From positions 258,634 to 322,633 of the IMG/VR virus record IMGVR_UViG_3300031576_000001: a stretch of 64,000 nt of DNA; one strand, given 5' to 3'. The notes below the pieces were generated by a model. The model worked only from the letters and a program-made list of their open reading frames with translations. It made no database searches and was not told the origin of the DNA. Position numbers and translations under genes: made by a program. The stretch's first letter is position 1. Every line of letters starts with the position of its first letter. This document shows positions 32,088 through 57,522 of this stretch, one piece after another.

Positions 32088-33695
32088 ATGCCATCGTGGT
32101 TTAGCGAGAACACGTCAGACAAGCAGCACTACAATCCAGGGCAAGTTTACTCCAACTTGCAGACCCTCTTTGAGAAGGACTGCCTGCGAAACGGTCGCAC
32201 CTTCTCCGCTTGGGATCTGTCGGGTATACTCAGGGACGGAAGCTCCTTCGCTGCGTGGGAGAAGAAAATAAAGTCCCTGGGTTTTGGCCGAGCTAGCTTT
32301 TACCGCTCGGACTGGGCTGAACTCACACCGGAACCGGAGAGCGAAACCGTGGTCACCGTGGTCTACCTCGGGGACCACGGGGTGGTGCAATACCAGGGTC
32401 CGCTGACCGGCACCCTTCGAGCCGTCAACGTGATCGCTAACGTGAGCGCTACCGTGAGCCAAGACAAGACGCGCGAAGAGATGCTCACGTTTCTCAGGGC
32501 TAACCTGCAAGAGCGACCTTCCAAAGAGACGGGGGCGCCCTTCCTGGCGACGACCGACTCACGCGGGGGGTTGACCTTCGAGCAAAACCTGACCAGCGTG
32601 GGCTCTCCCTGGGTACCCACTAACTACAGCAAAGAGGTTCGGGCAGCTTACAGCGCCATGCTACCTGCCTTCGCCTCTAAGAACCCCTCGGGCAAGCTGG
32701 TCATCCTCAACGGAGCGCCTGGCACTGGCAAGTCCTTCCTGCTTCAGGCATTGCTGTACGACACCCGGGATCGGTTTTGCCATATCATCATGCCGCCCTA
32801 CATGATGCACAACATCACCGGACCCCAAACCATGTCCGCCCTGCTTCAGCACCGGAACGAAAACACGCGCAAGCGTACCGTCTTCTTCCTAGAGGACGCC
32901 GAGGACGCTCTCTTGGTACGTCAGGGCGATAACCACAGCGCGGTGAGCAACATCCTCAACCTGAGCGACGGTATGATGGGGAAGATCCTCGACATACGGA
33001 TCGTTGCCACCACCAACCGCAAGAAGGTTGAGCTAGACCCCGCCCTAATCCGTGATGAGCGCCTCTTGGCTCATATCTCCGTGGACCCCCTCTCCCCAGA
33101 GGAAGCCCGGGAAGCCTTTGATCACGTCTACCCAGAGAAGGCGGGTCAGTACACCCCGCACTACCCAACCAGCCTGGCTACCGTCTACAAGACAGCCAAG
33201 TCAATGGGGTGGACAGCACCAGAGCCCGCCGATAAGCCCGCTTCTCGCGGTGTGGTGACCCAGCGCCAGATCGACCGAGACGAGGCTAAGGTCCGGGGAC
33301 AATCCAAGGTAGGCGTTAGGGCACAACCGCGCAAACCCCACCTGGCAAGCGCCCCCAAGTTACCCCAGGCTAGGCGTCTCTTCGACAACGCAGCGGACCA
33401 CGCCCCACTCTATGCACCGGAGAAGGTAAAGGGCGATAACCGCCTCAGTGGGGTAGGAAGGCCAGAGGGTTCCCTCGTCGTCGGTCGCCCACCAGTTTGT
33501 GGTGTCGCTGCGTATGTCCGCCAGGATCTCCTCAAGCGTCTGCGGACTCTCGCTACTTACCCAGTGAAAGATGCCCCCCGTCTCTCGCTCAAACCGTTTG
33601 TGCTCAGCCGGGTCTGCAACGCGCAAGAAGGCGCCAGCAAGGACACGTTGAAATCGGGCACGCACAACGGGCGTCATCGGGTATCCCCTGGGTAG
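32088..33695 (+). CDS. AAA+ ATPase
   Basis: Walker A GAPGTGKS, Walker B FFLEDAE, TTN and LDPALIR; in-frame TTA at 33360 (proposed end 33362). Confidence 0.9.
   Translation: MPSWFSENTSDKQHYNPGQVYSNLQTLFEKDCLRNGRTFSAWDLSGILRDGSSFAAWEKKIKSLGFGRASFYRSDWAELTPEPESETVVTVVYLGDHGVVQYQGPLTGTLRAVNVIANVSATVSQDKTREEMLTFLRANLQERPSKETGAPFLATTDSRGGLTFEQNLTSVGSPWVPTNYSKEVRAAYSAMLPAFASKNPSGKLVILNGAPGTGKSFLLQALLYDTRDRFCHIIMPPYMMHNITGPQTMSALLQHRNENTRKRTVFFLEDAEDALLVRQGDNHSAVSNILNLSDGMMGKILDIRIVATTNRKKVELDPALIRDERLLAHISVDPLSPEEAREAFDHVYPEKAGQYTPHYPTSLATVYKTAKSMGWTAPEPADKPASRGVVTQRQIDRDEAKVRGQSKVGVRAQPRKPHLASAPKLPQARRLFDNAADHAPLYAPEKVKGDNRLSGVGRPEGSLVVGRPPVCGVAAYVRQDLLKRLRTLATYPVKDAPRLSLKPFVLSRVCNAQEGASKDTLKSGTHNGRHRVSPG
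33360..33677 (-). CDS. hypothetical protein
   Basis: ATGA-coupled to 33674-33895; its TAA pairs with the AAA gene's TTA. Confidence 0.65.
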   Translation of the reverse strand: MTPVVRARFQRVLAGAFLRVADPAEHKRFERETGGIFHWVSSESPQTLEEILADIRSDTTNWWATDDEGTLWPSYPTEAVIALYLLRCIEWGVVRCVVEETPSLG

Positions 33696-33895
33696 GTCGG
33701 GGGGCGTGCGCCATCGTTTACGTCAAGAGCCAGGTCGTCTAGAGCCTCATTGATGTAACCCTTGACCGTGGTAATCAAGGCAGACTCACCGATGCAGCCC
33801 GTGTACAGCTTGCTATTCATAATAGCCTCAGCTAGCCGCAGACGTTCTGCTTTAAGAGCCCGGTCAATGAGGGTCTGTACTTCTGCCTCGGTCAC
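33674..33895 (-). CDS. small hypothetical protein
   Basis: Coupled within the minus-strand operon. Confidence 0.55.
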   Translation of the reverse strand: MTEAEVQTLIDRALKAERLRLAEAIMNSKLYTGCIGESALITTVKGYINEALDDLALDVNDGARPPTYPGDTR

Positions 33896-34338
33896 TATAG
33901 CGCTCCACTCCTGGGTTTGGTTTTGCGCTCCCCCGTCAAGTAATCAAGAAGCGCGGTGCTCACCCTGTACCCCATAAGACAAGTAGCGGGCACCCTGAGA
34001 GCCCCTGAGAGGTTGTAGGCTGCGTGCCTGTGGTGCCCGTTCTCTAGAACCACGTCCAAGCGCCCGCCCAGGTAGGACACAAAAGTCACCTCGATAGGGT
34101 CCAGCACGACACCCTGACGCAGTTGGTCAAGGAAGAACCGTATGCGCCCGTGATGCCAGGCTCTCTCTGCCTCGGTCTGGTAGTCAGGGCGAAAAGCCTC
34201 TGGCTTGTATCGCTTGACCGGTATAGCGCCCTCAATCTGAGCCAAGGTTACGCCCCCAAAAGCGCAGAAGTTGCGCTTCGGTAGGCGAGTCGCAATGAGG
34301 TTGTGAACGAGGGCGCCTTTAGCTTTGAGGCGTAGCAC
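33895..34338 (-). CDS. ParB/Srx-like domain protein
   Basis: LDPIEV...LENGHHRHAAY. Confidence 0.65.
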   Translation of the reverse strand: MLRLKAKGALVHNLIATRLPKRNFCAFGGVTLAQIEGAIPVKRYKPEAFRPDYQTEAERAWHHGRIRFFLDQLRQGVVLDPIEVTFVSYLGGRLDVVLENGHHRHAAYNLSGALRVPATCLMGYRVSTALLDYLTGERKTKPRSGAL

Positions 34339-34344
34339 TCTGCC

Positions 34345-34788
34345 TCACTCCCCTCTCAGGTAACGCTCCAACCAAGCCCCCCGAAAGAGGTTCAGCGAGG
34401 CGCAAACCTGCAAACCCATGACTTCGGAGGGGAAAAACCACCCCGACCCCATGCTGGCGGTCAGATTCAGTTTCACAAACGGGGTGAGTCCTGTAACCCC
34501 GTAGTGCCGTATCCGGCAAGCCCGCCCAACGGTCGGTGGCACGAGATTGTGCTCCAAGAGGGGCTTTGGGTTGACTCCACCGTCCAGGGGGGACCAACCT
34601 AGCTCCTCAGTCAACTCACGCTTTAGTGCGGTGTAGTCGTCCTCACCGGGCTCAACCTTGCCGCCAGGGCACTCCCACTTACCCCCCAGTCGGTCGTCGG
34701 AGGGTCGCCTCTGCGTCAAGAAGATACGACCCCCCCAGGAGAGGATGGCACACACCACGTTGATGACCGGTCGGTTCGTCACTGGCAA
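34345..34788 (-). CDS. Nudix hydrolase (MutT-like)
   Basis: Nudix box GGKVEPGEDDYTALKRELTEELG. Confidence 0.92.
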   Translation of the reverse strand: MPVTNRPVINVVCAILSWGGRIFLTQRRPSDDRLGGKWECPGGKVEPGEDDYTALKRELTEELGWSPLDGGVNPKPLLEHNLVPPTVGRACRIRHYGVTGLTPFVKLNLTASMGSGWFFPSEVMGLQVCASLNLFRGAWLERYLRGE

Positions 34789-35378
34789 AACCTCTCAGCA
34801 GAGAGACTGGCGTAGGTCTGCCACGTAGAGCCCTCTTTTAGCTTTGGGCGGTGCTCACACCAGCCGAAAATCTCGAAACGGGCGCAGTCCTCGCTCATAC
34901 CGCAAGGGGGGTAGTACCAGCACACATCGCAAATCCTTGCACCCGCAGGCTCGGCTAGCTCGTGCGAATAATGGTGCAGGTTAGGGTGCGTCACTACCCC
35001 TGAGCACTCCTCACAAGGGCAAAAACAGCACGGCGAAGAGGGGGGTGCGTCCAGTAGCTCCCTCACGGGGGTGCGCAGTCGCCAAGCTGGCGTCTGTCCA
35101 GGGGGCTTGGGTACAAGGTAAGAGACCTCCCCGCTAAGCAAAGCCTCGCTTAGTTGCCTCGCGTCCGGCAAAGTGCTCGTGTAACCCGTGATTTCAAAGA
35201 GGCGCTCGTCGAAAGAGACCTCCCCGAGGTAGCGCGTCAAGCGTGAACCGTTGTCTTCAATCTCCGCGACTTCCTCCAGGGCTACCCTACCTTCGCCCAG
35301 GAAGTGAGCCACACGTCCCGTAGCCACAACCACGGAGAACCACCGCCCTTGGTAGTCTGCTAGCGTGCAGTCGGTCAC
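34779..35378 (-). CDS. Cys-rich hypothetical protein
   Basis: GTGA overlap with the upstream gene; CCFCPC and CDVC. Confidence 0.55.
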   Translation of the reverse strand: MTDCTLADYQGRWFSVVVATGRVAHFLGEGRVALEEVAEIEDNGSRLTRYLGEVSFDERLFEITGYTSTLPDARQLSEALLSGEVSYLVPKPPGQTPAWRLRTPVRELLDAPPSSPCCFCPCEECSGVVTHPNLHHYSHELAEPAGARICDVCWYYPPCGMSEDCARFEIFGWCEHRPKLKEGSTWQTYASLSAERFCQ

Positions 35379-37108
35379 GTTGCTTTCCCTTGCGGAGCCA
35401 AGAGATACCATTGACGGTGGTCGGTACGGTACCGGGCCACTTGCACAACACAGCGAGGTACGGATGGGTCCGTGTACACATCCCGTAGCCCCTTGTAGGT
35501 CTGGCGGTCAACGATCACCGAGCCCTCGTACCAAGTGTCACCTTGGTAGTGCTCCCTCGGAGGAGCCTTACGGATCGACAACAAGGGCAGGTTGCTGGGG
35601 TGTACGAAGAGGCAAAAGTGCCCCTCTAGGGCGAGAATCTCTTCCATTGTGTGTGCTGTACGCAACCCCATCAGGGACGAGCCATCAGGGACGAGCAGAC
35701 TTACAGCCCGATTAAGACCAGCACGGAGCGAACCCAGCGCCTCTTGCGCCACAGAAGCACGCTCGATGACCTCCTCTGCCGTGAGCGAGTCAAGGTCAGC
35801 GTACCACACAACCTCCCCAAGAGGGCTTTGCTCAGGCGCCTCCTCACTGTTGAAGGCTTTCTCTACAGCCTCGGTTACCAGAATAACCTCAGCGGGCTCT
35901 GTTTCGGTGACGGGGGGAGGGGGAACCGTACTGTCAATCTCAAGAGCCGCTGCTGGCGGTACCCACGGCTTCGTGCGATTCAGGAAGGCCGAGCGAAGAA
36001 CCGTGGTCTCCCCAAGGAAACGCTCACCCTCGTCAAAGAAGGAAAGCCTGAGCCTGGGGAGCCGCTTGGTACCTGCATAGCCCAGAACCTTGAACTTGAG
36101 CGCCGGACTGGACCAGCTTGACACACCCCCCACTGCGGGCAGCTTGGAGCCAGGCAGTAGGACGTGACGGGAGCCCACCTCGGGCTGAACCCCCTCAGCC
36201 GGCGCACCTCCCAAGAGGCGAGCACGGTGGATCTTCGCGGGTTGAACCCTCTCCGTGGACTTCAGGAATTCCTTCAAGGCCCAGGTGTCTTTCGCGGGCC
36301 TATGTTCGCCCGGCTTACCCCAGGTGACCGTACCCTCAACGTGCTTGTCGTTCACGACCCGTACCTTGATCCGAGGGCTCCCATAATCATCCCACGTTCC
36401 ACCGTCCACACAAGCCAGCTTGCGACCGGGCTTGAGCCGGTACACCGCACCCACCACAGGAGTGTCGGCGCCCTTGGGCTCGGGCTTTGCTTTGACAGAC
36501 ACGGCTGGTGCCTCTACCGGAGCGCTCTTGTCTTGGGTTGGGGTGCTGGGCAAAGCCTCTGGCTTGGCAGGCGCAGCCACAACACGCTCGGTCGTCTTCA
36601 AGAACTCGTCCAGGGTGATGCAGTCAATCCGGTCAGGACGGTCTACGCTCACCTTGACGAGGGGCGTTCCGTCCTTGAAGGTCTCCACCGCTAGCACGGT
36701 AAACTGGCTTAGGTAGCTCCAGTGCCCCGAGTAGTACCCTGACGCGGCGTGCGACCAACACTTATTCTCCCTCACAGCGTACTTCGCTCCCACTACCACC
36801 CCGTGCGTGTCCACTGGGTCAGCCTGCGCCTGCGGGGGAGAGGGAGAGGGTTTCTCAACCATGGTAGCCAGGAAGTTCTTGAGGGACACCCTGTCCATTT
36901 GAGTTACCATATCCTCTCCGGTAACTTCAACAGTGAGCACCGTCTCACCCACCGAGAGAACACGGAACCGTCGCCCGGTGTCAGACCACCACCCCCCGTC
37001 CAGCATCCTCAACTGGCAACCCTGCTCAATAGCCCACACAGAGCCTACCGAAGGTACCGCGGGCGTCCCCGTTGCCTGAGAAACCCCTTCACTCTCTTGC
37101 TTCTTCAT
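35375..37108 (-). CDS. repeat-domain protein (four ~70-aa units plus a C-terminal domain)
   Basis: Units VG..Y/W...F.VL.V...FL..T; paralogous to 37144. Confidence 0.75.
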   Translation of the reverse strand: MKKQESEGVSQATGTPAVPSVGSVWAIEQGCQLRMLDGGWWSDTGRRFRVLSVGETVLTVEVTGEDMVTQMDRVSLKNFLATMVEKPSPSPPQAQADPVDTHGVVVGAKYAVRENKCWSHAASGYYSGHWSYLSQFTVLAVETFKDGTPLVKVSVDRPDRIDCITLDEFLKTTERVVAAPAKPEALPSTPTQDKSAPVEAPAVSVKAKPEPKGADTPVVGAVYRLKPGRKLACVDGGTWDDYGSPRIKVRVVNDKHVEGTVTWGKPGEHRPAKDTWALKEFLKSTERVQPAKIHRARLLGGAPAEGVQPEVGSRHVLLPGSKLPAVGGVSSWSSPALKFKVLGYAGTKRLPRLRLSFFDEGERFLGETTVLRSAFLNRTKPWVPPAAALEIDSTVPPPPVTETEPAEVILVTEAVEKAFNSEEAPEQSPLGEVVWYADLDSLTAEEVIERASVAQEALGSLRAGLNRAVSLLVPDGSSLMGLRTAHTMEEILALEGHFCLFVHPSNLPLLSIRKAPPREHYQGDTWYEGSVIVDRQTYKGLRDVYTDPSVPRCVVQVARYRTDHRQWYLLAPQGKAT

Positions 37109-37143
37109 CGTATGACTCCTGGCGATAAACTACACCGTGACAC

Positions 37144-38469
37144 TCAACCTACCACAAAGAGACACCACCGACCACCCTGGTACTGCTCCGTAAACGTGTG
37201 CGTGACACCTACCACGGCTATCCTGGGGGGCAATCGCGCGTCCGTATGAACGTACACCCAAGAGCGCATTCCCTTGAGCCGATGCCTGCCCACAGACTTC
37301 CACTCCCGGGCTGCACCCGCAACCACCCCCCCCTGCTTCTCAAAACTGGGCGCCAAAGCCGTCCAGTCCACAGGGTTGAAGACTACATGACCCCCAGCAG
37401 CCCCCGTCAAGTTGATAACCTCAGAGACCGTATGCGTCCGCGTCATCAGGTCCAGCCCCCCTGACGTGGGTGACAAGAGACCCACAGCCTCTCGGTACGA
37501 CGCCTCAAGAGACTGCAAAGCCTCTCGGGCTACGCCGGCTTGCTGTACAACCTCCTCCCGCGTCATGAGCCCCACGTCGCGCCACCACGGACGAGGAGCA
37601 TCCACGCTAGGCGCCACACCCAGCGAAACCCAGCCCCTAGAGACCCCACAGGCCAGGGAGGTAGGCTCAGCTTTGACTACGGAACACTCAGAAGTCGGCT
37701 CAGCGTGAGGCACACCCTTGAGGAGGTCCATGTGGCGGCGCAAGTCCTCGACCAAAAACACGTCCTCATCTTGCCCACCCCTGCAGATTGACGGACCCAG
37801 GACCGTAACACGGACCAAAGGCGTGCCGTCTCGGTACACACCAAGACAAACCACCCGAAAACCATCGGGAATATCCCCGTCCCGCCACATACCCGAAAAC
37901 GTCTCGGATGATGAGTGTGACTGCACACCACACCCCTCCCTCACCACGTAAACCTCCCCAACACGAGGAAAAAGAAGCACCGTCTCACGCAAGAAGTGCT
38001 CCCCCTCGAAAAACACGGCGGTCGCCGCCCCACCCACCAGCACCATCACGCCAAGCAGACCCCCTCCCTCCGCAACCTCAAGAGCCATCACCACCCCCCC
38101 GGGGTACGGCTTCGTCCTACGTAGCACGCCCACCGTCGCAAGAAGCCTCTCCCGCAAAGAGACAACCTCCTCTTTCGGGCTGCCTTGCATAGGCTCATCG
38201 CCCACAGGGACCGTCAGGTGCAAAAAGTCCTCCCGCAACACAACGTCGTACTCCTCATCACCGCCAATCCTGCAGACCCGGAGATGCACCACGTCCACCC
38301 CCGTTTTGAGAGTGCCCACCCCCGCCACCGTGAACCGAGTAGACTCAGACCCCCACGAGCACTGCCTAGGAGTCTCAGGGGCGCTCCTCAACACGCCCAC
38401 AACTACCCCGTCAGCACCTAGCCTCAACCGGTACACGCCGCCTAGCACCACCTTAGCCTTCTCGCTCAT
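37144..38469 (-). CDS. repeat-domain protein, paralogue of 35375
   Basis: Shared units; WWRDVGLMTREEVVQQAGVAREAL vs WYADLDSLTAEEVIERASVAQEAL; GGTGTAAGGT 7 nt upstream. Confidence 0.7.
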   Translation of the reverse strand: MSEKAKVVLGGVYRLRLGADGVVVGVLRSAPETPRQCSWGSESTRFTVAGVGTLKTGVDVVHLRVCRIGGDEEYDVVLREDFLHLTVPVGDEPMQGSPKEEVVSLRERLLATVGVLRRTKPYPGGVVMALEVAEGGGLLGVMVLVGGAATAVFFEGEHFLRETVLLFPRVGEVYVVREGCGVQSHSSSETFSGMWRDGDIPDGFRVVCLGVYRDGTPLVRVTVLGPSICRGGQDEDVFLVEDLRRHMDLLKGVPHAEPTSECSVVKAEPTSLACGVSRGWVSLGVAPSVDAPRPWWRDVGLMTREEVVQQAGVAREALQSLEASYREAVGLLSPTSGGLDLMTRTHTVSEVINLTGAAGGHVVFNPVDWTALAPSFEKQGGVVAGAAREWKSVGRHRLKGMRSWVYVHTDARLPPRIAVVGVTHTFTEQYQGGRWCLFVVG

Positions 38470-38533
38470 ACCCCCCACCTTACACCAAGACCGAGAAGCC
38501 CCACGCCCCCGTAAGCACAAAGAAGCCTACCCC

Positions 38534-39301
38534 CTACGGAGAGGAGACCCCCAACAGCCACCGGGGCGTCCCTTCACCCAGCAACCTGGAGTCCCTTAGC
38601 TCACCCCTGGCAAGCTCAAGATACCGCGGAGACACTACGCCAGCAAGCGTAGCACGCTCACTCAAACATGGCGTGACACTCTCTCGGGTACCCTTCAAGA
38701 GAAAGTGCTCAAGTTGGGAGCGAGCCGAAGACACCTCACTCATCGAACGAAACCACGTACCACGTACACGCTCTACCCGATGTTTCCTCTCCGCACACGC
38801 CTTCTGGTACCGACTCACCGCCCACCCACACGCACCTACACCACCCACCAAGAACACAAGAGACAACCACCACACCGAAACCCACCACCCCACCAATGGC
38901 GCAACCCCCACCCCAAACAAGCCCGCCACGAACACCAACCACGAAAGCCCACCAAACCCCACAGGAGACGCCTCCAAGTCAGCCAACTCTAGCTCACACG
39001 CCCTCCCCACCAATGCCAACGCTACGCACTCCCTCTCTACGTGCAAAACAACCCGGGTAGACTCCCCCTCCGTCAGCACCGAAGCCTGTAGCCCACGCGC
39101 AAACTCGACTCGGAGACCCCTCTCCTCTCGCTTACGCCACTCCTCATGCTTCTTCGCAATAACCTCCTCACCCCTCTCCAGAAGCCACCTCTTCCACAAC
39201 CGCCTCCTCAAAGAAGCATACCCCTCCAGGCTCAACCCGTAACCCCTCGCCTCCCTCCGCTCCTTGACCGTCAACGCTGACACCTTCAACTTGACCGACA
39301 T
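38534..39301 (-). CDS. membrane protein (two TM helices)
   Basis: Hydrophobic LSWLVFVAGLFG and WWLSLVFLVGG segments; GGTGTA motif at 39313. Confidence 0.6.
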   Translation of the reverse strand: MSVKLKVSALTVKERREARGYGLSLEGYASLRRRLWKRWLLERGEEVIAKKHEEWRKREERGLRVEFARGLQASVLTEGESTRVVLHVERECVALALVGRACELELADLEASPVGFGGLSWLVFVAGLFGVGVAPLVGWWVSVWWLSLVFLVGGVGACGWAVSRYQKACAERKHRVERVRGTWFRSMSEVSSARSQLEHFLLKGTRESVTPCLSERATLAGVVSPRYLELARGELRDSRLLGEGTPRWLLGVSSP

Positions 39302-39417
39302 AACCAGCCCCTTACACCCTCCCCCCAAGAGAAAAGGCTGAGCCAAAAAAGCACCCTCCCTAACCTACGCCTCACCTCAGCCCCAGCCCCCAGCCTAAAG
39401 GGTGTATACCCACACCC

Positions 39418-40032
39418 GTGACACCAAGAGCCCTCCTCGACTGCGACGGAGTAGTCGCCAACTTCACCCACCACGTCGGGCACAGAGCCCACCAACTCGC
39501 TGGTCTGCCTACACCCACAGAGACACCTCCCTTCAAGAACTACAAATTCCTCCCCGAAGTCGCCGCCCTCACCGGTATACCCGAAGAGGAGGTCACCAAG
39601 GCGATCAGCTCCCCAGGCTTCTGCGAAACCATACCCCCCTTCCCAGGCGCTAGCGCCTTCGTTGACAACCTCAGCCAAACCCACGAAGTCATCATACTTA
39701 CCTCTCCCTGGTACTCACCCACATGGGTCAGCGAACGCTACGCCTGGCTCGCTAACCACCTCAATATACCCAGAAAAAATGTCATCTTCGCCCAACGAAA
39801 AGAACTCGTTCAGGGGGATATACTGATCGATGACCGCCTGATACACCTGACCCGATGGGTTTCAACTCAGTTGGCAGCCAATTCGCGAAAAGATTTCGCA
39901 GGGGTCTTGTATAACCCCACCCCCGCGGGAGTACCCCTCCCCACTCTGAAGGGTCTCTCCCTCTGTGCTACTTACAACGACATCTTGTCTGTAGCCAGGG
40001 CACAGGCAGGGGGGAGGGATTGGAACCTCTAA
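39418..40032 (+). CDS. HAD-family 5'(3')-deoxyribonucleotidase (NT5C-like)
   Basis: LLDCDGVVANF, ILTSP, K and GDILIDD motifs. Confidence 0.88.
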   Translation: MTPRALLDCDGVVANFTHHVGHRAHQLAGLPTPTETPPFKNYKFLPEVAALTGIPEEEVTKAISSPGFCETIPPFPGASAFVDNLSQTHEVIILTSPWYSPTWVSERYAWLANHLNIPRKNVIFAQRKELVQGDILIDDRLIHLTRWVSTQLAANSRKDFAGVLYNPTPAGVPLPTLKGLSLCATYNDILSVARAQAGGRDWNL

Positions 40033-40079
40033 ACCTAGCCTGACCCAATTGGGTGTGGAGTTAGGCTCTTCAACCCACC

Positions 40080-41114
40080 TCAGAGCTTCTTGCAGCCTGC
40101 GACGTACCACTGGCGAGCCGCGTCGGATACGGCTTTCTGAGCCGTTTTCGCGTCTAGCCCGGAACAAGCTAGCTCAGCGTTGCACTCCTTGAGCACGTCC
40201 GCCGTCAACCAAGCCAGAAAGACACCGGTTTTCTTGGGGTCGAAGCTACCCCCACAGACCACAGAAAGCCCCTGCTCCAGGCGGGCGCCCGTGACGACCA
40301 AAGAGGCGAAATCGGCGGCGTTTCGGGTTACCGTGGCGCTGGCTTGGGCTGGCGCCGTCCTGGTGACCGCGCAAGCGTGGTGCTTCTCGCCCTTGGCTTT
40401 GAAGCAGAGGTTGGAAAAGCGCTTATAATCGCTGCCCAGAGAGGGCTCGTCAGCCTCAGCCCCCGAGGGCACGGGGTAGAAGACCAGCCCTTCGCCCGTG
40501 CCCTCTACGCCAAAGGTGTTGCGTACCCAGGGGTCGCACTCCTCGACAGCGAGGACGTGCTGGTTGATCCGGTCTAGCGTGGGCTGTAGAGCTTCGTCGG
40601 AAGCCGCCCAGTTCACCATGTAGGCTTCGCCGTCCTGGTACCAGGGGAGCACGTAGCAGCCGGGGATGACCTGGGTCAGCCGGGAGAGGGTCTCTGGATC
40701 GTCGAGGAAGTCGATAACCCCAGGGTGGTCAACGAGGCGGGCAGCAAAGACGGCAAAGACCTTCGCTTTGAGGAGGTTGACGGCGACGCCCTTCTGAATG
40801 CCGGGTCCACACCACTCCCCGAAGAGGACCAGGGCGCCCGCCAGAGGAGCCAGCTTGGCTATCGTTGCCTGGCGCTCGTAGACCCACCTAGCAAAGCCCG
40901 CATTGTCCGAGTCCAGGGAGAGCACGCTGGTGCGGGACAGGGCAGTTACCCCCTCTTGGCTGATCTTTATGCCGGCGTTGGTGCCATGGAGCTTCACCTT
41001 GGCGCGGTAGCTCACGGTTGACGCCCCCTGGTCAAGAAGCTCCGGGTAGAGGGTCAGCTTGCGCCTGGCATTGTGAAAGTTGTCAATCTCGGTCCACTTG
41101 ACGTGCTCTGTCAT
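40080..41114 (-). CDS. RNA ligase, Rnl2 family
   Basis: KLHGTN (motif I), FGEWCGPGIQKG, GEGLVF, FKAKGEKH. Confidence 0.85.
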   Translation of the reverse strand: MTEHVKWTEIDNFHNARRKLTLYPELLDQGASTVSYRAKVKLHGTNAGIKISQEGVTALSRTSVLSLDSDNAGFARWVYERQATIAKLAPLAGALVLFGEWCGPGIQKGVAVNLLKAKVFAVFAARLVDHPGVIDFLDDPETLSRLTQVIPGCYVLPWYQDGEAYMVNWAASDEALQPTLDRINQHVLAVEECDPWVRNTFGVEGTGEGLVFYPVPSGAEADEPSLGSDYKRFSNLCFKAKGEKHHACAVTRTAPAQASATVTRNAADFASLVVTGARLEQGLSVVCGGSFDPKKTGVFLAWLTADVLKECNAELACSGLDAKTAQKAVSDAARQWYVAGCKKL

Positions 41115-41173
41115 GCCCGAGAGGGTACACCGCCCGGCGCTCAACCTCTCAGGGGGACCACCACCCCCTTTCA

Positions 41174-41216
41174 AAAACCCTCACGCTGATACGGCAAACC
41201 CAAAGAAATTGAAAGC
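41174..41216. repeat. 43-bp inverted repeat, left arm
   Basis: Reverse complement of 42113-42155 with 1 mismatch. Confidence 0.9.
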
Positions 41217-41870
41217 CAGGAGACCCTCTCGTCCGTGACGCGATGTGTCATGATGACCTCGGGGCACTCGGTACACAAAAGGCACGTTTGGGGTCGTGTT
41301 TTGTGCCTCGTGCCACCCCCCGGATTTACCGATGTTTTTGTGGTCCAGCCCCTAGGGGGAGACTCCATGCGGAGAGGGGTCCAAATTATGGAACCTCCAT
41401 ACACTTGATCGGCCTTTTTGCCAGGGGTCAGGAGTGACACCCCCTCTCTGCTCAATCGTGCTACGCCTAAGTGTGCTCAACTGGAGTCCTCGCCGGGGTC
41501 CAATTCGGATGTATTTCAAGAAACCCCGATCAATAGAGGGGTGTCATGTTTGACCTGAGAGGCGTGTCTAGGTAGCACGCATGACCCCCTACGCGCACAA
41601 TCGTGCCACGGTATGCCCTACGTGTAGGGTCATGTGTGGTCACGGTTGGCAGGGGGGGTGCGTCAATTTCTGAAGCTAGGAGGGGCTCATGCTGTGTGTG
41701 GAAGCTCCCACCTTGGGGGGCTTCTCTGCGCCTACGCTGGCGAGCCCCCTACCCCCTTGTGATTTGCGAATGCAGGAGGCGCCTCTTTGAGGCAAGGCGT
41801 AGCCCCAATTCATTTGGAAATTCGCGCCATTACCCTAGCCGGGTCTGCCCAGGGGCGGGAAGGGGTGAGT

Positions 41871-42049
41871 TCAGTACACACACAAATGAGGATCGGCTAG
41901 GAGCACCGGTATAGGATTTGAATTTTTTACCCGGTGCCCTGTCTCAGTACACACACAAATGAGGATCGGCTAGGAGCACCGGTATAGGATTTGAATTTTT
42001 TACCCGGTGCCCTGTCTCAGTACACACACAAATGAGGATCGGCTAGGAG
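41871..42049. repeat. 73-bp perfect tandem repeat (about 2.45 copies)
   Basis: Units start at 41871, 41944 and 42017. Confidence 0.95.
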
Positions 42050-42112
42050 GGTGGGGTGTGTTTTGAATTTTGGGTTGGAGGCTGTTTTCGATTACAGTGT
42101 GGCTGTAGCTGC

Positions 42113-42155
42113 GCTTTCAATTTCTTTGGGTTTGCCGTATCAGTGTGAGGGTTTT
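42113..42155. repeat. 43-bp inverted repeat, right arm
   Basis: Reverse complement of 41174-41216. Confidence 0.9.
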
Positions 42156-42305
42156 CGTGAGGGGGTTTCGGGTGAGACGGGGGGTCTCTATTTTCTACCC
42201 CGTTTTCTTTTTGGGTGGGTGTGGGGGTGGCTTCCTGAATTTTGGGTGGCAGAGAACGTAGCCTCGGGTGTTTTTTCTGCGAGGAGTGGTGTACCTAGTG
42301 TGCCC

Positions 42306-43133
42306 ATGGGATGTTTTCCTCTAGCGGGTCAAGACGAGTCCTTGAGCGGTCCTTACGTACCGTGTGTGTACGTGGCTTCCAGGCTACAGTACGCTTCCAT
42401 GTGGCGATCTTACCGAGAGGGTTGGGCTACGTCGGTAAGGGTGACCTCACGGTGGCTCGACGTAGTGGGCGAGGTGTCTGACAAGGGTGGGTTGTGGCAG
42501 GGCCTTATGGCGGACATAGTGAGGTCGGACGTTTTGCTAGCCTACGGGGAGGCTGGCGAGGTGTGGCAGGGTGCTCTTGTCGAGGTGGGCGCCGCCCTGG
42601 CTCTAGGTAAGCCAGTGCTTGTTGTGGGTGCAGGGGTGAACAGCTTTTGGAGTCACCCGTTGGTTACGCGCTTCGATACGGTAGAGGCTGCCATGGCTTC
42701 GCTTGGGGTACAGCGTCCCCTCTCACCTGCGCCTATTACGGAGTCTGTGAGGGTGATGGTGATGTCCGAGGTACGGCACGTTGGCATGTGGAGGGAGTGC
42801 GTAGCTTCTCAGCCTCCAGGGGTGAGCATAGTCTCTAGGTGGCTGGATGATGTGGCGGTGGGGGACACGGTACGGATGTGGCTTGAGTACCTGGAGGACA
42901 CGAAGCGCGCTCAAGCGGTCATTCTCTATGGTGGCTTTGATGATGACGCGCTATGGGAGCGCCAGCTAGTCAGGGTAGCGGTTCACGTAGCGCTGCTAGC
43001 CAAGAAGCCTGTCTACGTGGTGGGTTCTGGCTCGGGCTCAGAAAATCTAGGCATAGGGGCTTCGCCTCTTGTGCGTCTGTGTGCTTCGGTCGAGGAGGCT
43101 TTTCGGTTGGCTGCCGTTCTGTCTTCCCCTTAA
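42306..43133 (+). CDS. tandem nucleoside 2-deoxyribosyltransferase-like protein
   Basis: VYVAS...TSRW...DIVRSDVLL...GALVEVGAALALGKPV, followed by a degenerate second copy. Confidence 0.75.
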   Translation: MGCFPLAGQDESLSGPYVPCVYVASRLQYASMWRSYREGWATSVRVTSRWLDVVGEVSDKGGLWQGLMADIVRSDVLLAYGEAGEVWQGALVEVGAALALGKPVLVVGAGVNSFWSHPLVTRFDTVEAAMASLGVQRPLSPAPITESVRVMVMSEVRHVGMWRECVASQPPGVSIVSRWLDDVAVGDTVRMWLEYLEDTKRAQAVILYGGFDDDALWERQLVRVAVHVALLAKKPVYVVGSGSGSENLGIGASPLVRLCASVEEAFRLAAVLSSP

Positions 43134-43828
43134 AAGGAAGAACCCCGTAGCCCTTGGGGGTGCCTACGGGGCGCTCGATACCTCTTTGCGTAGAGGCTTG
43201 GTAAGCGAACGATGCTCCGAGAGCGGGGTCTCGTGGGTGTGGTCAGGGTGTATTTGTCACCGCCGCCTGTGGGGGGGCGGGGTGCGTTAGTATTGGTAGC
43301 CCTGTTGATGAGCGCCTGTAGAGCCGCTGTCGAGAGCACGTTACTTTTGGAGACGGGGCTGAGTGTGGTAGGCGTAGCCTTGTATAGGTCGGGGTTATTG
43401 AGGAACCCGTGACCGTCGAGGTCGCCGTCGAGACCAAAGAGGAAGTTGAGTGCAGTCGCCGCGAGAGATCCGCTACCCGTGAGGTTATTGCCGGTACCGA
43501 ACGTGCTCACCAAATTCAGTGGGCTCGTTAGCGTACCGCTCCCTGTTGTGGACCCTGTGTAAGCTAGGGCAAGATTAAGCCCTGTACCGTTGGCGAAGAG
43601 GGTGCCTATACCCGTGGCCGCGCCATTTGCGACGGCGACTAGGTTTAGGTTGACCGCTGTAACTGTGCCCACGCCGGTCGTATTGCCTATGTAGGCGAGG
43701 GCAAGGTTAAGGGGGGCTGACAGAGAACCAGCGCCCGTGGTGCTACCGGCGTAGGTAAGGTCTAGGTTCAAGAAAGCAGAGAGGTCACCATTACCATCTA
43801 GATTACCGTCAAGAAGTTGGTCAGCCAT
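43130..43828 (-). CDS. virion structural protein with G/T/N-rich repeats
   Basis: ~20-aa repeats NLALAY.G.TTG.G.L; CTTATCC motif upstream; in-frame TTA at 43202. Confidence 0.65.
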   Translation of the reverse strand: MADQLLDGNLDGNGDLSAFLNLDLTYAGSTTGAGSLSAPLNLALAYIGNTTGVGTVTAVNLNLVAVANGAATGIGTLFANGTGLNLALAYTGSTTGSGTLTSPLNLVSTFGTGNNLTGSGSLAATALNFLFGLDGDLDGHGFLNNPDLYKATPTTLSPVSKSNVLSTAALQALINRATNTNAPRPPTGGGDKYTLTTPTRPRSRSIVRLPSLYAKRYRAPRRHPQGLRGSSF

Positions 43829-43927
43829 GGGTCAGTACCGTGCGTGCCTCTCAGTGGGTAGCGTAGGGGATAAGAGGCAACCCTCAAAAGGGTTGCTCTG
43901 CTCTGCTCTGCGGTGTAAGGGGAAAGG

Positions 43928-44242
43928 GTGACAACCAAGAAGACGAAAACCACGGAAGCTCAGCGCACCCACGAAGAGGGGGAGTTTGGTACGATTGAAT
44001 GGCGTGCGCAGTTGGAGGGTTCTGCGTTGCACCACAATTGGCACGATCCCTTCGAGGTGATGCTACGCAGGTTGAATCAAGCCACCTCGACCCCCGCTTA
44101 CATCAAGGACTCTGCGATACACGTCCACGATACGCTTCTGCTCGCTCAGTCCATAGCCGTCTCCCTTTTCGGGTGGGACTGGAAAGAACACGTCATGGAC
44201 GTGTACGACCGTATCCAGAAGCACCTCTACCAAAGGGAGTAA
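43928..44242 (+). CDS. hypothetical protein
   Basis: GGTGTA motif at 43912; followed by a hairpin. Confidence 0.6.
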   Translation: MTTKKTKTTEAQRTHEEGEFGTIEWRAQLEGSALHHNWHDPFEVMLRRLNQATSTPAYIKDSAIHVHDTLLLAQSIAVSLFGWDWKEHVMDVYDRIQKHLYQRE

Positions 44243-44726
44243 CCCCTTGTAAGGGTACCCATGAAGAAAGCCCAGGAAGACTGTCTTCCTGGGCTTCTTC
44301 GCGCTTGGCTTGAAGAGGGGCTTCTCTTGGTAAGGTTTCCGAGGCGGTCAAGCTACTTGTCAAGAATTTGGCTACGTCACCGGAGAGCACGGTGCGGGGT
44401 GTGCCCAGCGAGGCGTAGTACAGAAGGTCTCCAGCTACAGCGGCGTTGTACACACCGAAGCCGTTCACGGTGCCCCAGTTGGCGGTTGCGGCGGGGAACG
44501 TCACGTCGGACACCGACGCAGAGCTTCCGGAGACGGGAGTGCCAAAGGTTGTGGACACGTCAACGCGAGCGTAGCTCCCACCAGAGACCTCGACACCACC
44601 CACGCCGCCAGCGCCCGGTGTGGTGGTAAAGAGTGCCATATGCACGCTGGTGGGCTGGGTGATTACGGAGCCTGGGATGAGCCAGAACTTGAGGGTATCG
44701 TTATCGGTAGCGTAGCTCTTGGGCAT
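44193..44726 (-). CDS. phage tail-fibre-associated structural protein
   Basis: ALFTTTP...EVSGGSYAR...FPAATANWGTV..FGVYNA..GDLL; from recall this family ends near LTASET, which is followed by TTA at 44331. Confidence 0.8.
   Translation of the reverse strand: MPKSYATDNDTLKFWLIPGSVITQPTSVHMALFTTTPGAGGVGGVEVSGGSYARVDVSTTFGTPVSGSSASVSDVTFPAATANWGTVNGFGVYNAAVAGDLLYYASLGTPRTVLSGDVAKFLTSSLTASETLPREAPLQAKREEAQEDSLPGLSSWVPLQGVTPFGRGASGYGRTRP
44263..44300. terminator. hairpin between convergent genes
   Basis: AAGCCCAGGAAGAC/GTCTTCCTGGGCTT perfect inverted repeat. Confidence 0.75.
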
Positions 44727-44820
44727 GGTGGTCTCTCGGTGTCCTCTAAGGTAGTGAGTGTGGGTCGGTCTCGGTAGGTGTGGGTAGGATAAGAGCCTGC
44801 GTAGGTTACTGAAGATTTCT

Positions 44821-44858
44821 GTGAATCCTGAGATGGGTTGAGCGTAAGAGGAGGCAAC
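44821..44858 (+). promoter_or_regulatory. GTGAA-N17-CGTA promoter-like motif
   Basis: GTGAATCCTGAG...GAGCGTAAGAG before ATG 44859. Confidence 0.7.
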
Positions 44859-45014
44859 ATGACGCACAAGACCAAGACCGGGGGCAAGCTGCCCTTCAAC
44901 AGCAAGCACTACCGGAGCCACCGCGAGGTTCTTCGTGGGTGGGACCGGTGGGGCGCACTGCGTGCGGCTCGTCGAGTCCTCAAGAACAACAGTCTCGCCC
45001 TCTCTCCGCGTTGA
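44859..45014 (+). CDS. small basic protein (51 aa, absent from the ORF track)
   Basis: GGAGG SD and promoter motif; MTHKTKTGGKLPFNSKHY... Confidence 0.6.
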   Translation: MTHKTKTGGKLPFNSKHYRSHREVLRGWDRWGALRAARRVLKNNSLALSPR

Positions 45015-49030: not shown

Positions 49031-49290
49031 GGTAACAATCTCTCGTGTTTGGGTGCCTGGCGGAAGGGGTACACCGAGAGAGCCACGGGGAGGACCACGC
49101 TTGCGGGGGAGCTAGAAGAAGGCTTTCATGGTGAGCGTAGGGTAACCAGGGTTAGAGGTTGGTACAAGGGGTGCGCCCTGCGGGAGTTGAACCCGCGCAA
49201 AAGAACTTTAGAGGCTCTGTACTCTACCTTTGAGTTAAAGGCGCGTTGTGTGGGCTTCTGCTCGATCTCACGAGGTAGCCCGTTGTGAAG

Positions 49291-56476: not shown

Positions 56477-57522
56477 GGTTGCTCTTTAGTCTCTCTAAGG
56501 TTGGTCAGGATAAGTAGTAAGATTCCCAAGAATACAAGTTTGCCTGCGGACCCTGCTGAGCCCGCTGTAGCGGAGCCTCCACCTGGGGCACCACCGGCAC
56601 CCCCGTTAGCGGTAGGCGCAGTCCCAGAGAAAAAGCGGTAGAGGACAATGCAATAGCCTCCTCCCCCTCCCCCTCCTCCAGCACCGTACTTGTTGTCCAC
56701 GGCGTTACCCCCACCATTGCCTCCGGCAGAGCCGTCAGCGTTGATGGTGCCACTGTTGACAACATTGTAGGCTACAAGGACAAGGACGCCGCCACAGGCA
56801 CCACCCCCACCGCCAAAGGTTGCGTTCTGTTCTGCTGTAAAGGAGCCACCGTAGCCCCCACCACCGCCGCCACTACCGCCACAAAGCGCCGTGGGGGTTC
56901 CAGGGGGACCACTGGCCAGACTTTGAAAGGTCGCGTGAACTAGCTCTGTTAGGGAGTAGCCTGGTTGGTGAGTAGGGGCGGTAACATTTCCTGCCGAGCC
57001 TCCTACCCCAGACCCCGAACCCACGCCTGTCCCTCCCGCCCCGCCCTTACCTCCCACGGAGTTTACACTGGACGCGCCAGAACCCCCGTTCGCCCCGCTG
57101 TGCGAGCCGCCCACCCCGCCGGCAGCCGTAACACCCATGACGGTTCCACTGTTGGTGGTAGCGCCGCCTTGTGGGATATTTGAGGCTGTGGACGCTTGGG
57201 TGGAGTCCCCCTTGCCGGCTGGGGTTGCAATAGCCCCATCTGTCGTACCGCCGCGAGCGTCTACCGTACCCCCAGAGGCGACCGTGAGGGTATTCTTGAC
57301 AAACACCCGGTAGCCCGCGACAGACAACCTACCCGTAGAGGTCACGGTCAGGTTGTTGTAGTACATATCCCGCGCAAGGACGACCGTAACAATCACGGTC
57401 ACGTCACCATCGCTTCCGTCCCCGAAGTACGCCATGATAGCGTTGCGTATCACGAGGGTATCCGTGGACGGAATCACCGTGAGCGTACCATTAATCATGG
57501 CGAGGGGAGAACAGTCAGGCAC
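56359..57522 (-). CDS. glycine-rich fibre/structural protein
   Basis: FGDGSDGDVT...YYNNLTV and GGGGGG runs; in-frame TTA at 56518 (proposed end). Confidence 0.75.
   Translation of the reverse strand: MPDCSPLAMINGTLTVIPSTDTLVIRNAIMAYFGDGSDGDVTVIVTVVLARDMYYNNLTVTSTGRLSVAGYRVFVKNTLTVASGGTVDARGGTTDGAIATPAGKGDSTQASTASNIPQGGATTNSGTVMGVTAAGGVGGSHSGANGGSGASSVNSVGGKGGAGGTGVGSGSGVGGSAGNVTAPTHQPGYSLTELVHATFQSLASGPPGTPTALCGGSGGGGGGYGGSFTAEQNATFGGGGGACGGVLVLVAYNVVNSGTINADGSAGGNGGGNAVDNKYGAGGGGGGGGYCIVLYRFFSGTAPTANGGAGGAPGGGSATAGSAGSAGKLVFLGILLLILTNLRETKEQPCLTSPHSYLTLVYTSRLPLRTPWKQGSDLTVAQVVPLR

What the first reader, a model, noticed from the sequence alone, without database searches (positions are those of the whole stretch)
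37100..43300. Strong local strand skew that flips across the repeat element
By eye, the plus strand is very C/A-rich at about 37100-39850 and G/T-rich at about 42050-43300. The left skew covers both minus-strand genes and the plus-strand 39418 gene, so it is not a coding-strand effect. It is strong enough to enrich V/G/W in 37144 and 38534, and it fades within a few kb. The RNA ligase gene (40080-41114) lacks it, suggesting later insertion. Inference: prolonged single-strandedness or strand-specific selection near an origin or terminus.
Basis: partly seen in the sequence, partly recalled or inferred. Interest (0 to 1): 0.6.

Follow-up and report, generated by a model that had tools for sequence, protein, structure and literature searches.

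The report
Mirrored local strand skew, huge phage
In an uncultivated huge-phage genome, two roughly 3-kb stretches on either side of a 2.2-kb neutral spacer have each lost about half the cytosines from opposite DNA strands, whatever the gene direction; this is the footprint expected when one strand is repeatedly left single-stranded, as at a replication start zone, but the cause could not be proven here.

Summary
The left domain (36760-39830) is C/A-rich on the plus strand (keto skew -0.30, against -0.007 +/- 0.037 for 3-kb windows elsewhere). The right domain starts abruptly at 42050, the end of the 73-nt repeat array, and is G/T-rich.

The skew is strongest at four-fold and third codon positions and follows the DNA strand, not the coding strand. 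The plus-strand NT5C gene is skewed the same way as its minus-strand neighbours. It also shifts amino-acid composition.

Both edges of the left domain lie inside genes. The skew therefore ends about 200 nt before the NT5C stop, not at the RNA ligase, so "RNA ligase inserted later" is not needed.

The polarity is origin-type, or outward-transcription-type, not terminus-type or break-resection-type. I found no polar oligomer, no G4 excess, no deaminase or reverse transcriptase gene, no genome-wide replication skew and no relatives.

Best reading (about 0.4): a long-acting, strand-specific mutation bias from recurrent outward single-strand exposure (R-loop or D-loop) launched from the spacer edges. 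Transcription alone, import or inversion of a skewed tract, and selection remain open. Read-level tests were unavailable.

The parts
36760..39830 (.). Left skew domain: plus strand C/A-rich (A .249 C .401 G .197 T .152). The minus strand, which runs 5'->3' away from the spacer, is G/T-rich. The skew strengthens towards the inner edge.
38790..39830 (.). Peak of the left domain: plus-strand third-position GC skew -0.63 to -0.78 across a divergent gene pair and their intergenic region.
35375..37108 (-). g35375, 577 aa, four SH3-like repeats plus a C-terminal domain. Only its 5' 345 nt (36764-37106) are skewed, so the outer edge of the left domain lies inside this gene.
   Evidence: (Fisher p=0.01)
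37144..38469 (-). g37144, 441 aa, a distant tandem paralogue of g35375. It is V/G-rich and has no relatives in the 5.8-billion-protein word-index search (search for homologous proteins).
38534..39301 (-). g38534, about 255 aa, coiled-coil plus a W/V/G-rich membrane-like segment. It is the most skewed gene of the record (third-position keto +0.65 on its coding strand).
39302..39417 (.). Divergent intergenic region, keto -0.50 on the plus strand. This is non-coding DNA and it carries the skew at full strength.
39418..40032 (+). NT5C-type 5'(3')-deoxyribonucleotidase gene on the opposite strand. Its first two thirds carry the left-domain skew at third positions (GC skew -0.63, -0.71); its last third does not (-0.14).
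39831..42049 (.). Neutral spacer (keto +0.01): 3' third of NT5C, palindromic convergent terminator, RNA ligase gene, and about 935 nt of non-coding DNA.
40080..41114 (-). RNA ligase gene (Pfam RNA_ligase), unskewed. Homologues at about 50% identity occur in many large IMG/VR phage contigs.
41115..42049 (.). Central non-coding region. The two ORFs called here score as non-coding. It is rich in palindromes (fold z about -3.4 on both strands). It is one of the two longest non-coding stretches of the record, and the longest if extended to 42305.
41163..41216 (-). Left arm of a 54-nt inverted repeat (93% complementary), facing outward, 49 nt upstream of the RNA ligase ATG.
41320..41410 (-). Leftward copy of a promoter-like intergenic element family (AAGTGTATGGA ... 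GGAGTC..CCCC..GGGGCT ... AAAAACATCG), with 7 other copies in the genome.
41871..42049 (+). 73-nt tandem repeat, 2.45 identical copies, unique in the genome. The right skew domain begins at the base after its last copy.
42050..42305 (+). Extremely G/T-rich leader (A .109 C .148 G .371 T .371, keto +0.48) with G clusters. Whether it codes is ambiguous.
42113..42166 (+). Right arm of the 54-nt inverted repeat, facing outward.
42306..43133 (+). g42306, 275 aa, two nucleoside 2-deoxyribosyltransferase-like domains, V/W-rich and G/T-rich at synonymous sites.
42050..43360 (.). Core of the right skew domain: plus strand G/T-rich (GC skew +0.28, AT skew -0.31).
43130..44921 (-). Minus-strand fibre-like genes (g43130, a repeat protein; g43832; g44193, Pfam Gp80). 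They carry a weaker tail with GC skew only: plus-strand third-position GC skew +0.35 to +0.59, and A-ending two-fold codons enriched in g44193 (z -3.5).

Best explanation
The two domains are the footprint of a long-acting, strand-specific mutation pressure that works in place.

On each side of the neutral spacer, the strand that runs 5'->3' away from the spacer has lost about half of its cytosines and some adenines, and gained G and T. The minus strand is affected on the left and the plus strand on the right.

The most likely cause is that this strand is repeatedly left single-stranded for long periods. Synthesis would be launched outward from the two spacer edges (about 39830 and 42050) and displace it over up to about 3 kb. 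This could be an R-loop made by outward transcription, a D-loop or strand-displacement tract of DNA synthesis, or the first priming the second, as at R-loop-primed origins.

The origin-proximal part would stay exposed longest. That gives a sharp inner edge and a fading outer edge. Purifying selection keeps the genes open and NT5C's catalytic motifs intact, while synonymous sites, non-coding DNA and tolerant amino-acid positions drift.

Shown: the skew, its strand (not gene) dependence, its synonymous-site location, its edges and its polarity.

Inferred: single-strandedness, the launch sites, and any origin function.
For: 1. Mutational rather than protein- or codon-driven. The skew is largest at four-fold sites and in non-coding DNA, smaller at codon positions 1 and 2. 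An opposite-strand gene with intact NT5C motifs shows the mirror codon bias.
2. C is about halved in every 5' and 3' context, which points to a general chemical-type process.
3. Two-fold sites show both transition channels biased several-fold. T/(T+C) is 0.40-0.66 against 0.24 +/- 0.08. G/(G+A) is 0.91-0.96 against 0.73 +/- 0.10. Opposite-strand genes have G/(G+A) of 0.38-0.57.
4. The skew is keto type (G with T), the same polarity as leading-strand and mitochondrial H-strand asymmetry. This rests on established knowledge; reviews are listed (PMC3269012, PMC4182315).
5. Both left-domain edges fall inside genes. The operon continues leftward unskewed, so the effect is limited by distance, not bounded by genes or operons.
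6. The right domain has a sharp inner edge, exactly at the end of a unique repeat array.
7. The two strongest islands of the genome lie 2.2 kb apart with opposite polarity, around a unique palindrome-rich non-coding region bounded by outward-facing 54-nt inverted repeats.
8. R-loop-primed origins exist in phage T4 and ColE1 (PMC12599619, read).
Against: - There is no genome-wide replication-type skew and no V-shaped cumulative skew beyond the local notch. An origin here would have to imprint only its first about 3 kb.
- No recognised origin motif, initiator gene or AT-rich unwinding element was identified. The spacer is 56-59% GC.
- The RNA ligase lies between the presumed leftward promoter and the left domain, yet it is unskewed.
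- The four-fold spectrum includes a net pyrimidine-to-purine shift of +0.07 to +0.13 (C replaced by G). Simple C->T plus A->G deamination does not give this in one step.
- The right-hand tail is weak and shows GC skew only.
- There are no relatives or reads to polarise substitutions.
- The record is only about 68% complete.
Confidence: 0.4

Rival explanations
1. Transcription only. Two very strong divergent promoters at the spacer edges expose the non-template strand, with or without R-loops but without any role in replication, and cause transcription-associated mutation.
For: - The polarity is the same as observed.
- The right inner edge is sharp, directly after a tandem repeat array that could hold promoters.
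- Outward-facing 54-nt repeats act as shared leaders.
- G clusters follow 42050.
- G+T excess on the sense strand is the known transcription-associated asymmetry in mammals (established knowledge).
Against: - NT5C must itself be transcribed, yet its sense strand is C/A-rich.
- The minus-strand operon runs on for 3.4 kb beyond 36760 without skew.
- The RNA ligase, downstream of the leftward element, is unskewed.
- Genes elsewhere have C>G on the sense strand at four-fold sites (-0.093). Transcription in this phage therefore does not generally make sense strands G-rich.
- No promoter could be defined at about 39830.
Confidence: 0.2
2. Imported or rearranged tract. One or two segments came from a donor replicon with extreme strand asymmetry. 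Alternatively, a single about 6-kb skewed tract was split by an inversion and a 2.2-kb insertion. The mirror image is then historical, not functional.
For: - Phage genomes are mosaic.
- An unrelated actinophage-like prophage (L037/L039) shows patches of genes with third-position keto skew up to 0.72 next to normal genes. Strongly skewed gene pools therefore exist.
- The arm genes are orphans.
- The skew jump lies near a convergent gene junction.
Against: - GC content of the domains equals that of the genome (0.60 against 0.59).
- Both left edges lie inside genes, one inside a gene whose tandem paralogue is next door.
- The skew grades with distance on the left.
- There is no other island in the record. 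The apparent second one was an ORF-calling artefact.
- This reading still does not explain how the donor tract became skewed irrespective of gene orientation.
Confidence: 0.15
3. Selection for a strand-specific function of the G/T-rich strand. Candidates are polar motifs (Chi- or KOPS-like), preferred recombinase loading on GT-rich ssDNA, G-quadruplexes, or stable R-loops.
For: - The polarity matches Chi-type orientation protecting the centre.
- RecA-type recombinases prefer GT-rich ssDNA (established knowledge).
- G3+ runs are twice as dense on the G-rich strands (36-40 per kb against 18.6 +/- 5.6).
Against: - No oligomer of 5-8 nt stands out on the G/T-rich strands beyond composition.
- G4 motifs are not enriched (one in each of two places).
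- Selection for hybrid stability would favour purines (G+A), not G+T.
- The skew is spread evenly over synonymous sites in all contexts.
Confidence: 0.08
4. Episodic enzymatic hypermutation of exposed single-stranded DNA by a host or phage deaminase (kataegis-like).
For: Strand-coordinated loss of C, with both C->T-like and C->G-like outcomes. This resembles deamination followed by abasic-site bypass.
Against: - There is no sequence-context preference.
- The polarity is opposite to 3'-tail exposure at a break in the centre (inference from geometry).
- No dCMP/cytidine, MafB19-type or DddA-like deaminase gene is in the record (the DddA control was uninformative).
- The genes remain open and functional-looking.
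Confidence: 0.07
5. Assembly or sequencing artefact.
For: The record is a single uncultivated metagenomic contig and the reads could not be inspected.
Against: - Long open reading frames carry Pfam domains in both orientations.
- Paralogy is preserved.
- The codon-position dependence of the skew is smooth, which no known error mode produces.
Confidence: 0.02

Closest known systems
Replication-origin skew switch in bacterial and viral chromosomes (leading strand G>C, T>A)
   Same: Sign change from C/A-rich to G/T-rich along one strand. Keto type. Visible at synonymous sites and independent of gene orientation.
   Different: Here it is confined to about 3 kb on each side instead of whole replichores. 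It is several-fold stronger (third-position GC skew to -0.78). A 2.2-kb neutral spacer separates the two sides. The rest of the genome shows no replication skew.
Vertebrate mitochondrial H/L-strand asymmetry with a gradient set by time spent single-stranded (strand-displacement replication, D-loop)
   Same: Comparable magnitude. G+T-rich against A+C-rich strands at four-fold sites. Strongest near the start of displacement and declining with distance, clearly so on the left. It reshapes amino-acid composition.
   Different: Two short divergent tracts in a 322-kb double-stranded DNA phage. The spectrum includes a net C-to-G component. The replication mode is unknown.
R-loop-primed origins (phage T4 oriF/oriG, ColE1, mitochondrial OH) and GC-skewed R-loop zones downstream of promoters
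   Same: G-rich non-template strand beginning just after a putative promoter and repeat region. G clusters at the start. Divergent arrangement. Displaced strand single-stranded.
   Different: No promoter, RNA-DNA hybrid or origin activity is shown. The known examples span tens to hundreds of bases, not 3 kb. T is enriched together with G, which hybrid stability would not select.
Transcription-associated strand asymmetry (G+T excess on the sense strand of mammalian genes)
   Same: Same base pairing of the excess (G with T) on the strand that would be non-template for outward transcription.
   Different: An expressed gene (NT5C) lies antisense to it, and the co-oriented operon beyond 36760 lacks it.
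Kataegis / APOBEC-type strand-coordinated clusters
   Same: Strand-coordinated loss of cytosine, with both T and G as replacements.
   Different: No context preference. Polarity opposite to resection at a central break. The composition looks fixed and long-term rather than a burst.

Membership tests
Origin-associated strand compositional asymmetry | Skew changes sign from C-rich to G-rich (5'->3') at the site | tested here: met
   the orientation-corrected CUSUM is V-shaped with its minimum at about 40.0-40.3 kb
Origin-associated strand compositional asymmetry | Skew present at synonymous sites irrespective of gene orientation | tested here: met
   NT5C(+) four-fold GC skew z -2.8 and R-ending G fraction z -2.6. 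g44193(-) R-ending z -3.5. Evidence on the right side is weaker.
Origin-associated strand compositional asymmetry | Asymmetry extends along the replichores (genome-wide) | tested here: not met
   15-kb bins show no orientation-corrected trend outside the locus. The cumulative skew has only a local notch. The record is about 68% complete.
Origin-associated strand compositional asymmetry | Origin elements (iterons, initiator boxes, AT-rich unwinding element) or mapped initiation | tested here: inconclusive
   The region is unique and non-coding, with a 73-nt x2.45 repeat, a 54-nt inverted repeat and many palindromes. It has no recognised motif and 56% GC. Initiation cannot be mapped with these tools.
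Mitochondrial-type strand-displacement asymmetry | G+T-rich against A+C-rich strands at four-fold sites | tested here: met
Mitochondrial-type strand-displacement asymmetry | Gradient with distance from the start of displacement | tested here: inconclusive
   Clear on the left: -0.78 near 39300, falling to -0.4 at 37000 and about 0 at 36500. Plateau-like on the right.
Mitochondrial-type strand-displacement asymmetry | Spectrum explained by C->T and A->G on the exposed strand | tested here: inconclusive
   Both transition channels are biased at two-fold sites. Four-fold sites also show a net purine gain of +0.07 to +0.13. Equilibrium effects cannot be excluded.
R-loop-forming GC-skewed zone / R-loop-primed origin | G-rich non-template strand with G clusters directly downstream of a promoter | tested here: inconclusive
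   Composition and G clusters are met (40% and 37% G; G3+ runs 30-40 per kb). Promoters are not demonstrated.
R-loop-forming GC-skewed zone / R-loop-primed origin | RNA-DNA hybrid and displaced strand detected | not testable with these tools
Kataegis / enzymatic ssDNA deamination | Sequence-context preference of the lost cytosines | tested here: not met
   C ratio is 0.46-0.71 in all 5' and 3' contexts.
Kataegis / enzymatic ssDNA deamination | Deaminase encoded or polarity of 3' tails at a break | tested here: not met
   No PF00383 or PF14437 hit. The PF14428 search was uninformative. The polarity is opposite to resection at the centre (geometry).
Diversity-generating retroelement | Reverse transcriptase, template/variable repeat pair, adenine-specific changes | tested here: not met
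   No RVT_1 hit. No TR/VR-like repeat. C, not A, is the main base lost.
Horizontally acquired island | Atypical GC content and boundaries at gene or module borders | tested here: not met
   GC is 0.599 against 0.592. Both left edges lie inside genes.
Polar motif array (Chi/KOPS-like) | A specific over-represented oriented oligomer | tested here: not met
   No 5-8-mer stands out beyond composition.

The most novel reading that the evidence does not exclude
A huge phage may start replication from a zone that keeps two divergent, about 3-kb displaced strands single-stranded for long periods, like a two-sided mitochondrial D-loop. This zone would act as a built-in local mutator. It would have stripped half the cytosines from the exposed strands and driven the flanking accessory genes (SH3-repeat paralogues, a membrane protein, nucleotide-salvage enzymes) into orphan sequence space.
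Probability: 0.2. Interest if true: 0.7.

Novelty: new variant of a known kind. Interest (0 to 1): 0.5.

Why it matters
Origins and replication modes of huge phages are almost entirely unknown, and they usually cannot be read from cumulative skew because transcription dominates it. A local footprint of mitochondrial strength that is independent of gene orientation would give a sequence-only marker for an initiation or R-loop zone. It would also show that a phage can carry a region with a several-fold higher, strand-specific mutation rate that speeds the evolution of neighbouring accessory genes. If it instead reflects an imported tract, it points to donor replicons with extreme strand asymmetry that have not been described for double-stranded DNA phages.

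Tried and rejected
- Relatives to polarise substitutions: none. The phages DNA search was empty. Viral-contig searches with g37144 and g42051 found nothing. The DNA polymerase has a best hit of 41%. g37144 matches only itself in the 5.8-billion-protein word-index search (search for homologous proteins). NT5C has a best hit of 36-39%.
- Flanks of the RNA ligase in 57 other viral loci: no comparable skew except in L037/L039, which are unrelated.
- A 'second island' at 56505-57543: rejected as an artefact of wrong ORF calls over a Gly-rich fibre gene.
- Polar oligomers and G-quadruplex motifs: not enriched.
- Trinucleotide asymmetry: confounded by the skew of flanking bases. It was replaced by a context analysis at four-fold sites.
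- GGTGTAT as a promoter at the left inner edge: rejected. It occurs at about the expected frequency and is mostly RBS or start context.
- Sigma-70 scan: no promoter-like sites.
- Rfam: no RNA family in 36-45 kb.
- Reverse transcriptase, deaminase and RNase H genes: none found in the held 68% of the genome.
- Third repeat copy as a mutated full copy: residual similarity is only marginal (p about 0.035-0.056).
- Genome-wide origin signal: none.
- Direct repeats near the domain edges (D5 and D12): judged compatible with chance.


Full report
WHAT THE SEQUENCE IS

The window is the last 64 kb of a single-contig IMG/VR virus record of 322,633 bp. The record is classed linear and CheckV estimates it at about 68% complete. 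It has 59% GC. It carries a family-A-type DNA polymerase, a helicase with an intein-like insert, and DNA methyltransferase domains.

It has no close relatives:
- The DNA polymerase's best viral hit is 41% identical.
- The region has no DNA match among 50,697 phage records.
- g37144 matches only itself in the word-index search of 5.8 billion proteins (search for homologous proteins).
- NT5C's best hit is 36-39% identical.

Yes.

In 500-nt windows, GC skew reaches -0.56 and AT skew +0.45 at 38.5-39.25 kb. The signs are reversed at 41.75-43.5 kb (+0.31 and -0.36).

These are the most extreme 1-kb windows of the whole record (z -6.3 and +4.4). The 3071-nt left domain has (G+T-A-C)/N = -0.30. For 1227 equally long windows elsewhere the value is -0.007 +/- 0.037, with a minimum of -0.152.

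Other windows above |z| 2.4 show only one skew component (GC or AT, not both) and lie in large genes: 73-81 kb of the record, and the Gly-rich fibre gene at window 52886-56476.

IS IT A CODING-STRAND EFFECT?

No.

Among 356 ORFs, g38534(-), g42051(+) and g37144(-) rank 1-3 for G+T excess on the coding strand. The plus-strand NT5C gene inside the left domain ranks second from the bottom.

After correcting for orientation and for codon family, the G/T-rich strand changes at four-fold sites as follows:
- C falls by 0.13-0.20.
- G rises by 0.05-0.17.
- T rises by 0.05-0.07.
- A falls by 0-0.07.

NT5C shows the mirror image on its sense strand (C +0.17, G -0.16).

Two-fold sites separate the transition channels:
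- Same-strand genes: T/(T+C) is 0.38-0.66 against 0.24 +/- 0.08.
- Same-strand genes: G/(G+A) is 0.91-0.96 against 0.73 +/- 0.10.
- Opposite-strand genes: G/(G+A) is 0.47 (NT5C), 0.57 (g43130) and 0.38 (g44193).

Non-coding DNA carries the skew at full strength: 39302-39417 has keto -0.50 and 42050-42305 has +0.48.

Codon positions 1 and 2 are shifted less than position 3. The proteins are still affected:
- V+G+W+F+C: z 2.3-3.4 in g37144, g38534 and g42306.
- P+T+H+Q+N+K: z -2.3 to -4.1 in those three genes, and +1.4 to +1.5 in the opposite-strand genes.

The genes are real:
- NT5C matches Pfam at E = 9e-14 and keeps its DxDxV and DD motifs.
- g42306 is a tandem nucleoside-2-deoxyribosyltransferase-like protein.
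- g37144 is a distant tandem paralogue of g35375.
- g44193 matches a podophage fibre family.

ANATOMY

Plus-strand third-position GC skew runs as follows:
- About 0 up to 36760.
- -0.40 in the 5' 345 nt of g35375.
- -0.22 to -0.51 in g37144.
- -0.49, then -0.77 and -0.78, in g38534.
- -0.63 and -0.71 in the first two thirds of NT5C.
- -0.14 in the last third of NT5C.

Both edges of the left domain therefore lie inside genes (Fisher p = 0.01 and 0.002). The co-oriented, tightly packed minus-strand genes further left (33674-36760) are unskewed.

The spacer, 39831-42049, obeys strand parity (keto +0.01). It contains:
- The end of NT5C.
- A palindromic convergent terminator.
- The RNA ligase gene.
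- About 935 nt of non-coding DNA. The two ORFs called there have non-coding scores.

The non-coding stretch is one of the two longest in the record. It folds better than shuffles on both strands, which indicates DNA palindromes (z about -3.4). It is bounded by outward-facing 54-nt inverted repeats that are 93% complementary. It ends in 2.45 identical copies of a 73-nt unit. All of these are unique in the genome.

It also holds a leftward copy of a promoter-like element family found at seven other intergenic sites. The spacer therefore looks native to this phage.

The right domain begins within a few bases of 42050, the end of the repeat array. In 150-nt windows, keto jumps from 0.03 to 0.51. 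Both GC and AT skew persist to about 43360. A weaker excess, GC skew only, continues through the minus-strand fibre genes to about 44920.

An orientation-corrected CUSUM is V-shaped with its vertex at 40.0-40.3 kb.

WHAT KIND OF PROCESS?

C on the G/T-rich strand is reduced about two-fold in every 5' and 3' context. This argues for a general process, not a motif-specific enzyme or methylation-linked deamination.

No 5-8-mer is over-represented on the G/T-rich strands beyond composition. G-quadruplex motifs are not enriched. Selection for a polar motif or for G4 is therefore unsupported.

T rises together with G. This is what deamination of an exposed strand produces (C->T, A->G). It is not what selection for stable RNA:DNA hybrids would produce, since that favours purines.

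The implied change in the ratio of transition rates is 3-6-fold for C->T. That is comparable to mitochondrial strand asymmetry.

One feature is not explained by simple deamination. At four-fold sites there is a net pyrimidine-to-purine shift of +0.07 to +0.13 (C replaced by G). Abasic-site bypass or equilibrium effects could account for it, but this is inference.

POLARITY

On both sides, the strand running 5'->3' away from the spacer is G/T-rich. That is the polarity expected in three cases:
- (a) The lagging-strand template of forks leaving the centre.
- (b) A strand displaced by outward strand-displacement or D-loop synthesis.
- (c) The non-template strand of outward transcription or R-loops.

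It is the opposite of a terminus. It is also the opposite of 3'-tail exposure after resection of a break in the centre.

Several observations argue against plain transcription level as the cause and for a distance-limited exposure anchored at the inner edges:
- The effect is distance-limited, not bounded by genes or operons.
- It covers an expressed antisense gene.
- Sense strands elsewhere in this genome are C-rich rather than G-rich at four-fold sites (-0.093).

There is no genome-wide replication asymmetry, so ordinary fork passage does not imprint this genome. Only something special about these 3-kb tracts does.

R-loop-primed origins are established for T4 and ColE1 (PMC12599619). GC skew downstream of promoters is linked to R-loops (PMC3787257). 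Mitochondrial asymmetry follows time spent single-stranded (PMC3269012 and PMC4182315; listed).

The observation and most of its descriptive claims are confirmed.

A strand-specific mutational footprint of origin-type polarity is the best reading, at about 0.4 for in-place single-strand exposure. I cannot separate a replicative variant from a purely transcriptional R-loop variant (rival, 0.2).

'Terminus' is excluded by polarity. 'Selection' has no support.

The argument that the RNA ligase was inserted later is not needed. The skew ends inside NT5C, before the ligase, and the whole spacer is neutral and native-looking. A recombinational replacement of the whole spacer cannot be excluded.

Import or inversion of a pre-skewed tract remains possible (0.15). 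It fits poorly with the edges inside genes, the unchanged GC content and the gradient.

LIMITS

- This is one uncultivated, incomplete genome without relatives.
- No read, RNA or population data are available.
- Evidence from opposite-strand genes rests on one strong case on the left (NT5C) and two weaker ones on the right.
- No promoter, origin element or initiator was identified.

Noticed in passing
window 49170-49244 (-): A tRNA gene with anticodon CTA. ARAGORN labels it tRNA-Pyl, and it would read the amber codon TAG. I did not test whether TAG is recoded in this phage. Gene density under the standard code looks normal (about 92% of the sequence covered by called ORFs).
   Followed up: no
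window 41163-41216 and 42113-42166: A 54-nt inverted repeat (93% complementary) brackets an 896-nt non-coding segment. Each arm faces outward as a shared upstream leader, one of the RNA ligase and one of g42306. The geometry would also allow inversion of the segment between the arms, which holds the repeat array and a promoter-like element. No recombinase was looked for.
   Followed up: partly
genome positions 2182(-), 23770(-), 126150(+), 145977(+), 163054(+), 182801(-), 245067(-); window 41405(-): A family of intergenic elements sharing AAGTGTATGGA. They also share a GGAGTC/GACTCC hairpin-like motif and a roughly 27-nt AT-rich box (GGGGCTCAGTGATAAAAACATCGTAAA), which occurs in either orientation. 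Most lie 5-111 nt upstream of gene starts. They are probably phage promoter or regulatory modules.
   Followed up: partly
L037 and L039 (IMGVR_UViG_2927234461_000003/4), e.g. L039:6456-7769 and 15497-16045: An unrelated, actinophage-like prophage (about 57% GC, all genes on one strand) has patches of genes with third-position G+T excess of 0.4-0.72 next to genes at -0.2 to -0.39. Against the DnaB of Gordonia phage Goib, synonymous third positions changed C->T 35 times, C->G 14 times and G->T 27 times, and hardly ever to A. Patchy G/T-ending skew therefore exists elsewhere. The cause is unknown, and strand versus gene dependence cannot be tested there.
   Followed up: partly
window 35375-38520 (-): g35375 and g37144 are tandem paralogues (about 40% identity over two segments). 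They are built from about 70-aa SH3-like repeats plus a shared C-terminal domain. The copy nearer the spacer is the more skewed and has no detectable relatives.
   Followed up: partly
window 52886-56476 (-) and 56359-57522 (-): Two overlapping or adjacent very Gly/Ala/Thr-rich fibre-like genes (1196 and 387 aa). Out-of-frame ORFs over the second one mimic an orientation-independent skew island, which is a trap for automated analyses.
   Followed up: yes
window 34345-43133: A cluster of nucleotide-handling accessory genes around the skew locus: NUDIX hydrolase (34345-34788), NT5C deoxynucleotidase, RNA ligase, and a tandem nucleoside deoxyribosyltransferase-like protein.
   Followed up: partly
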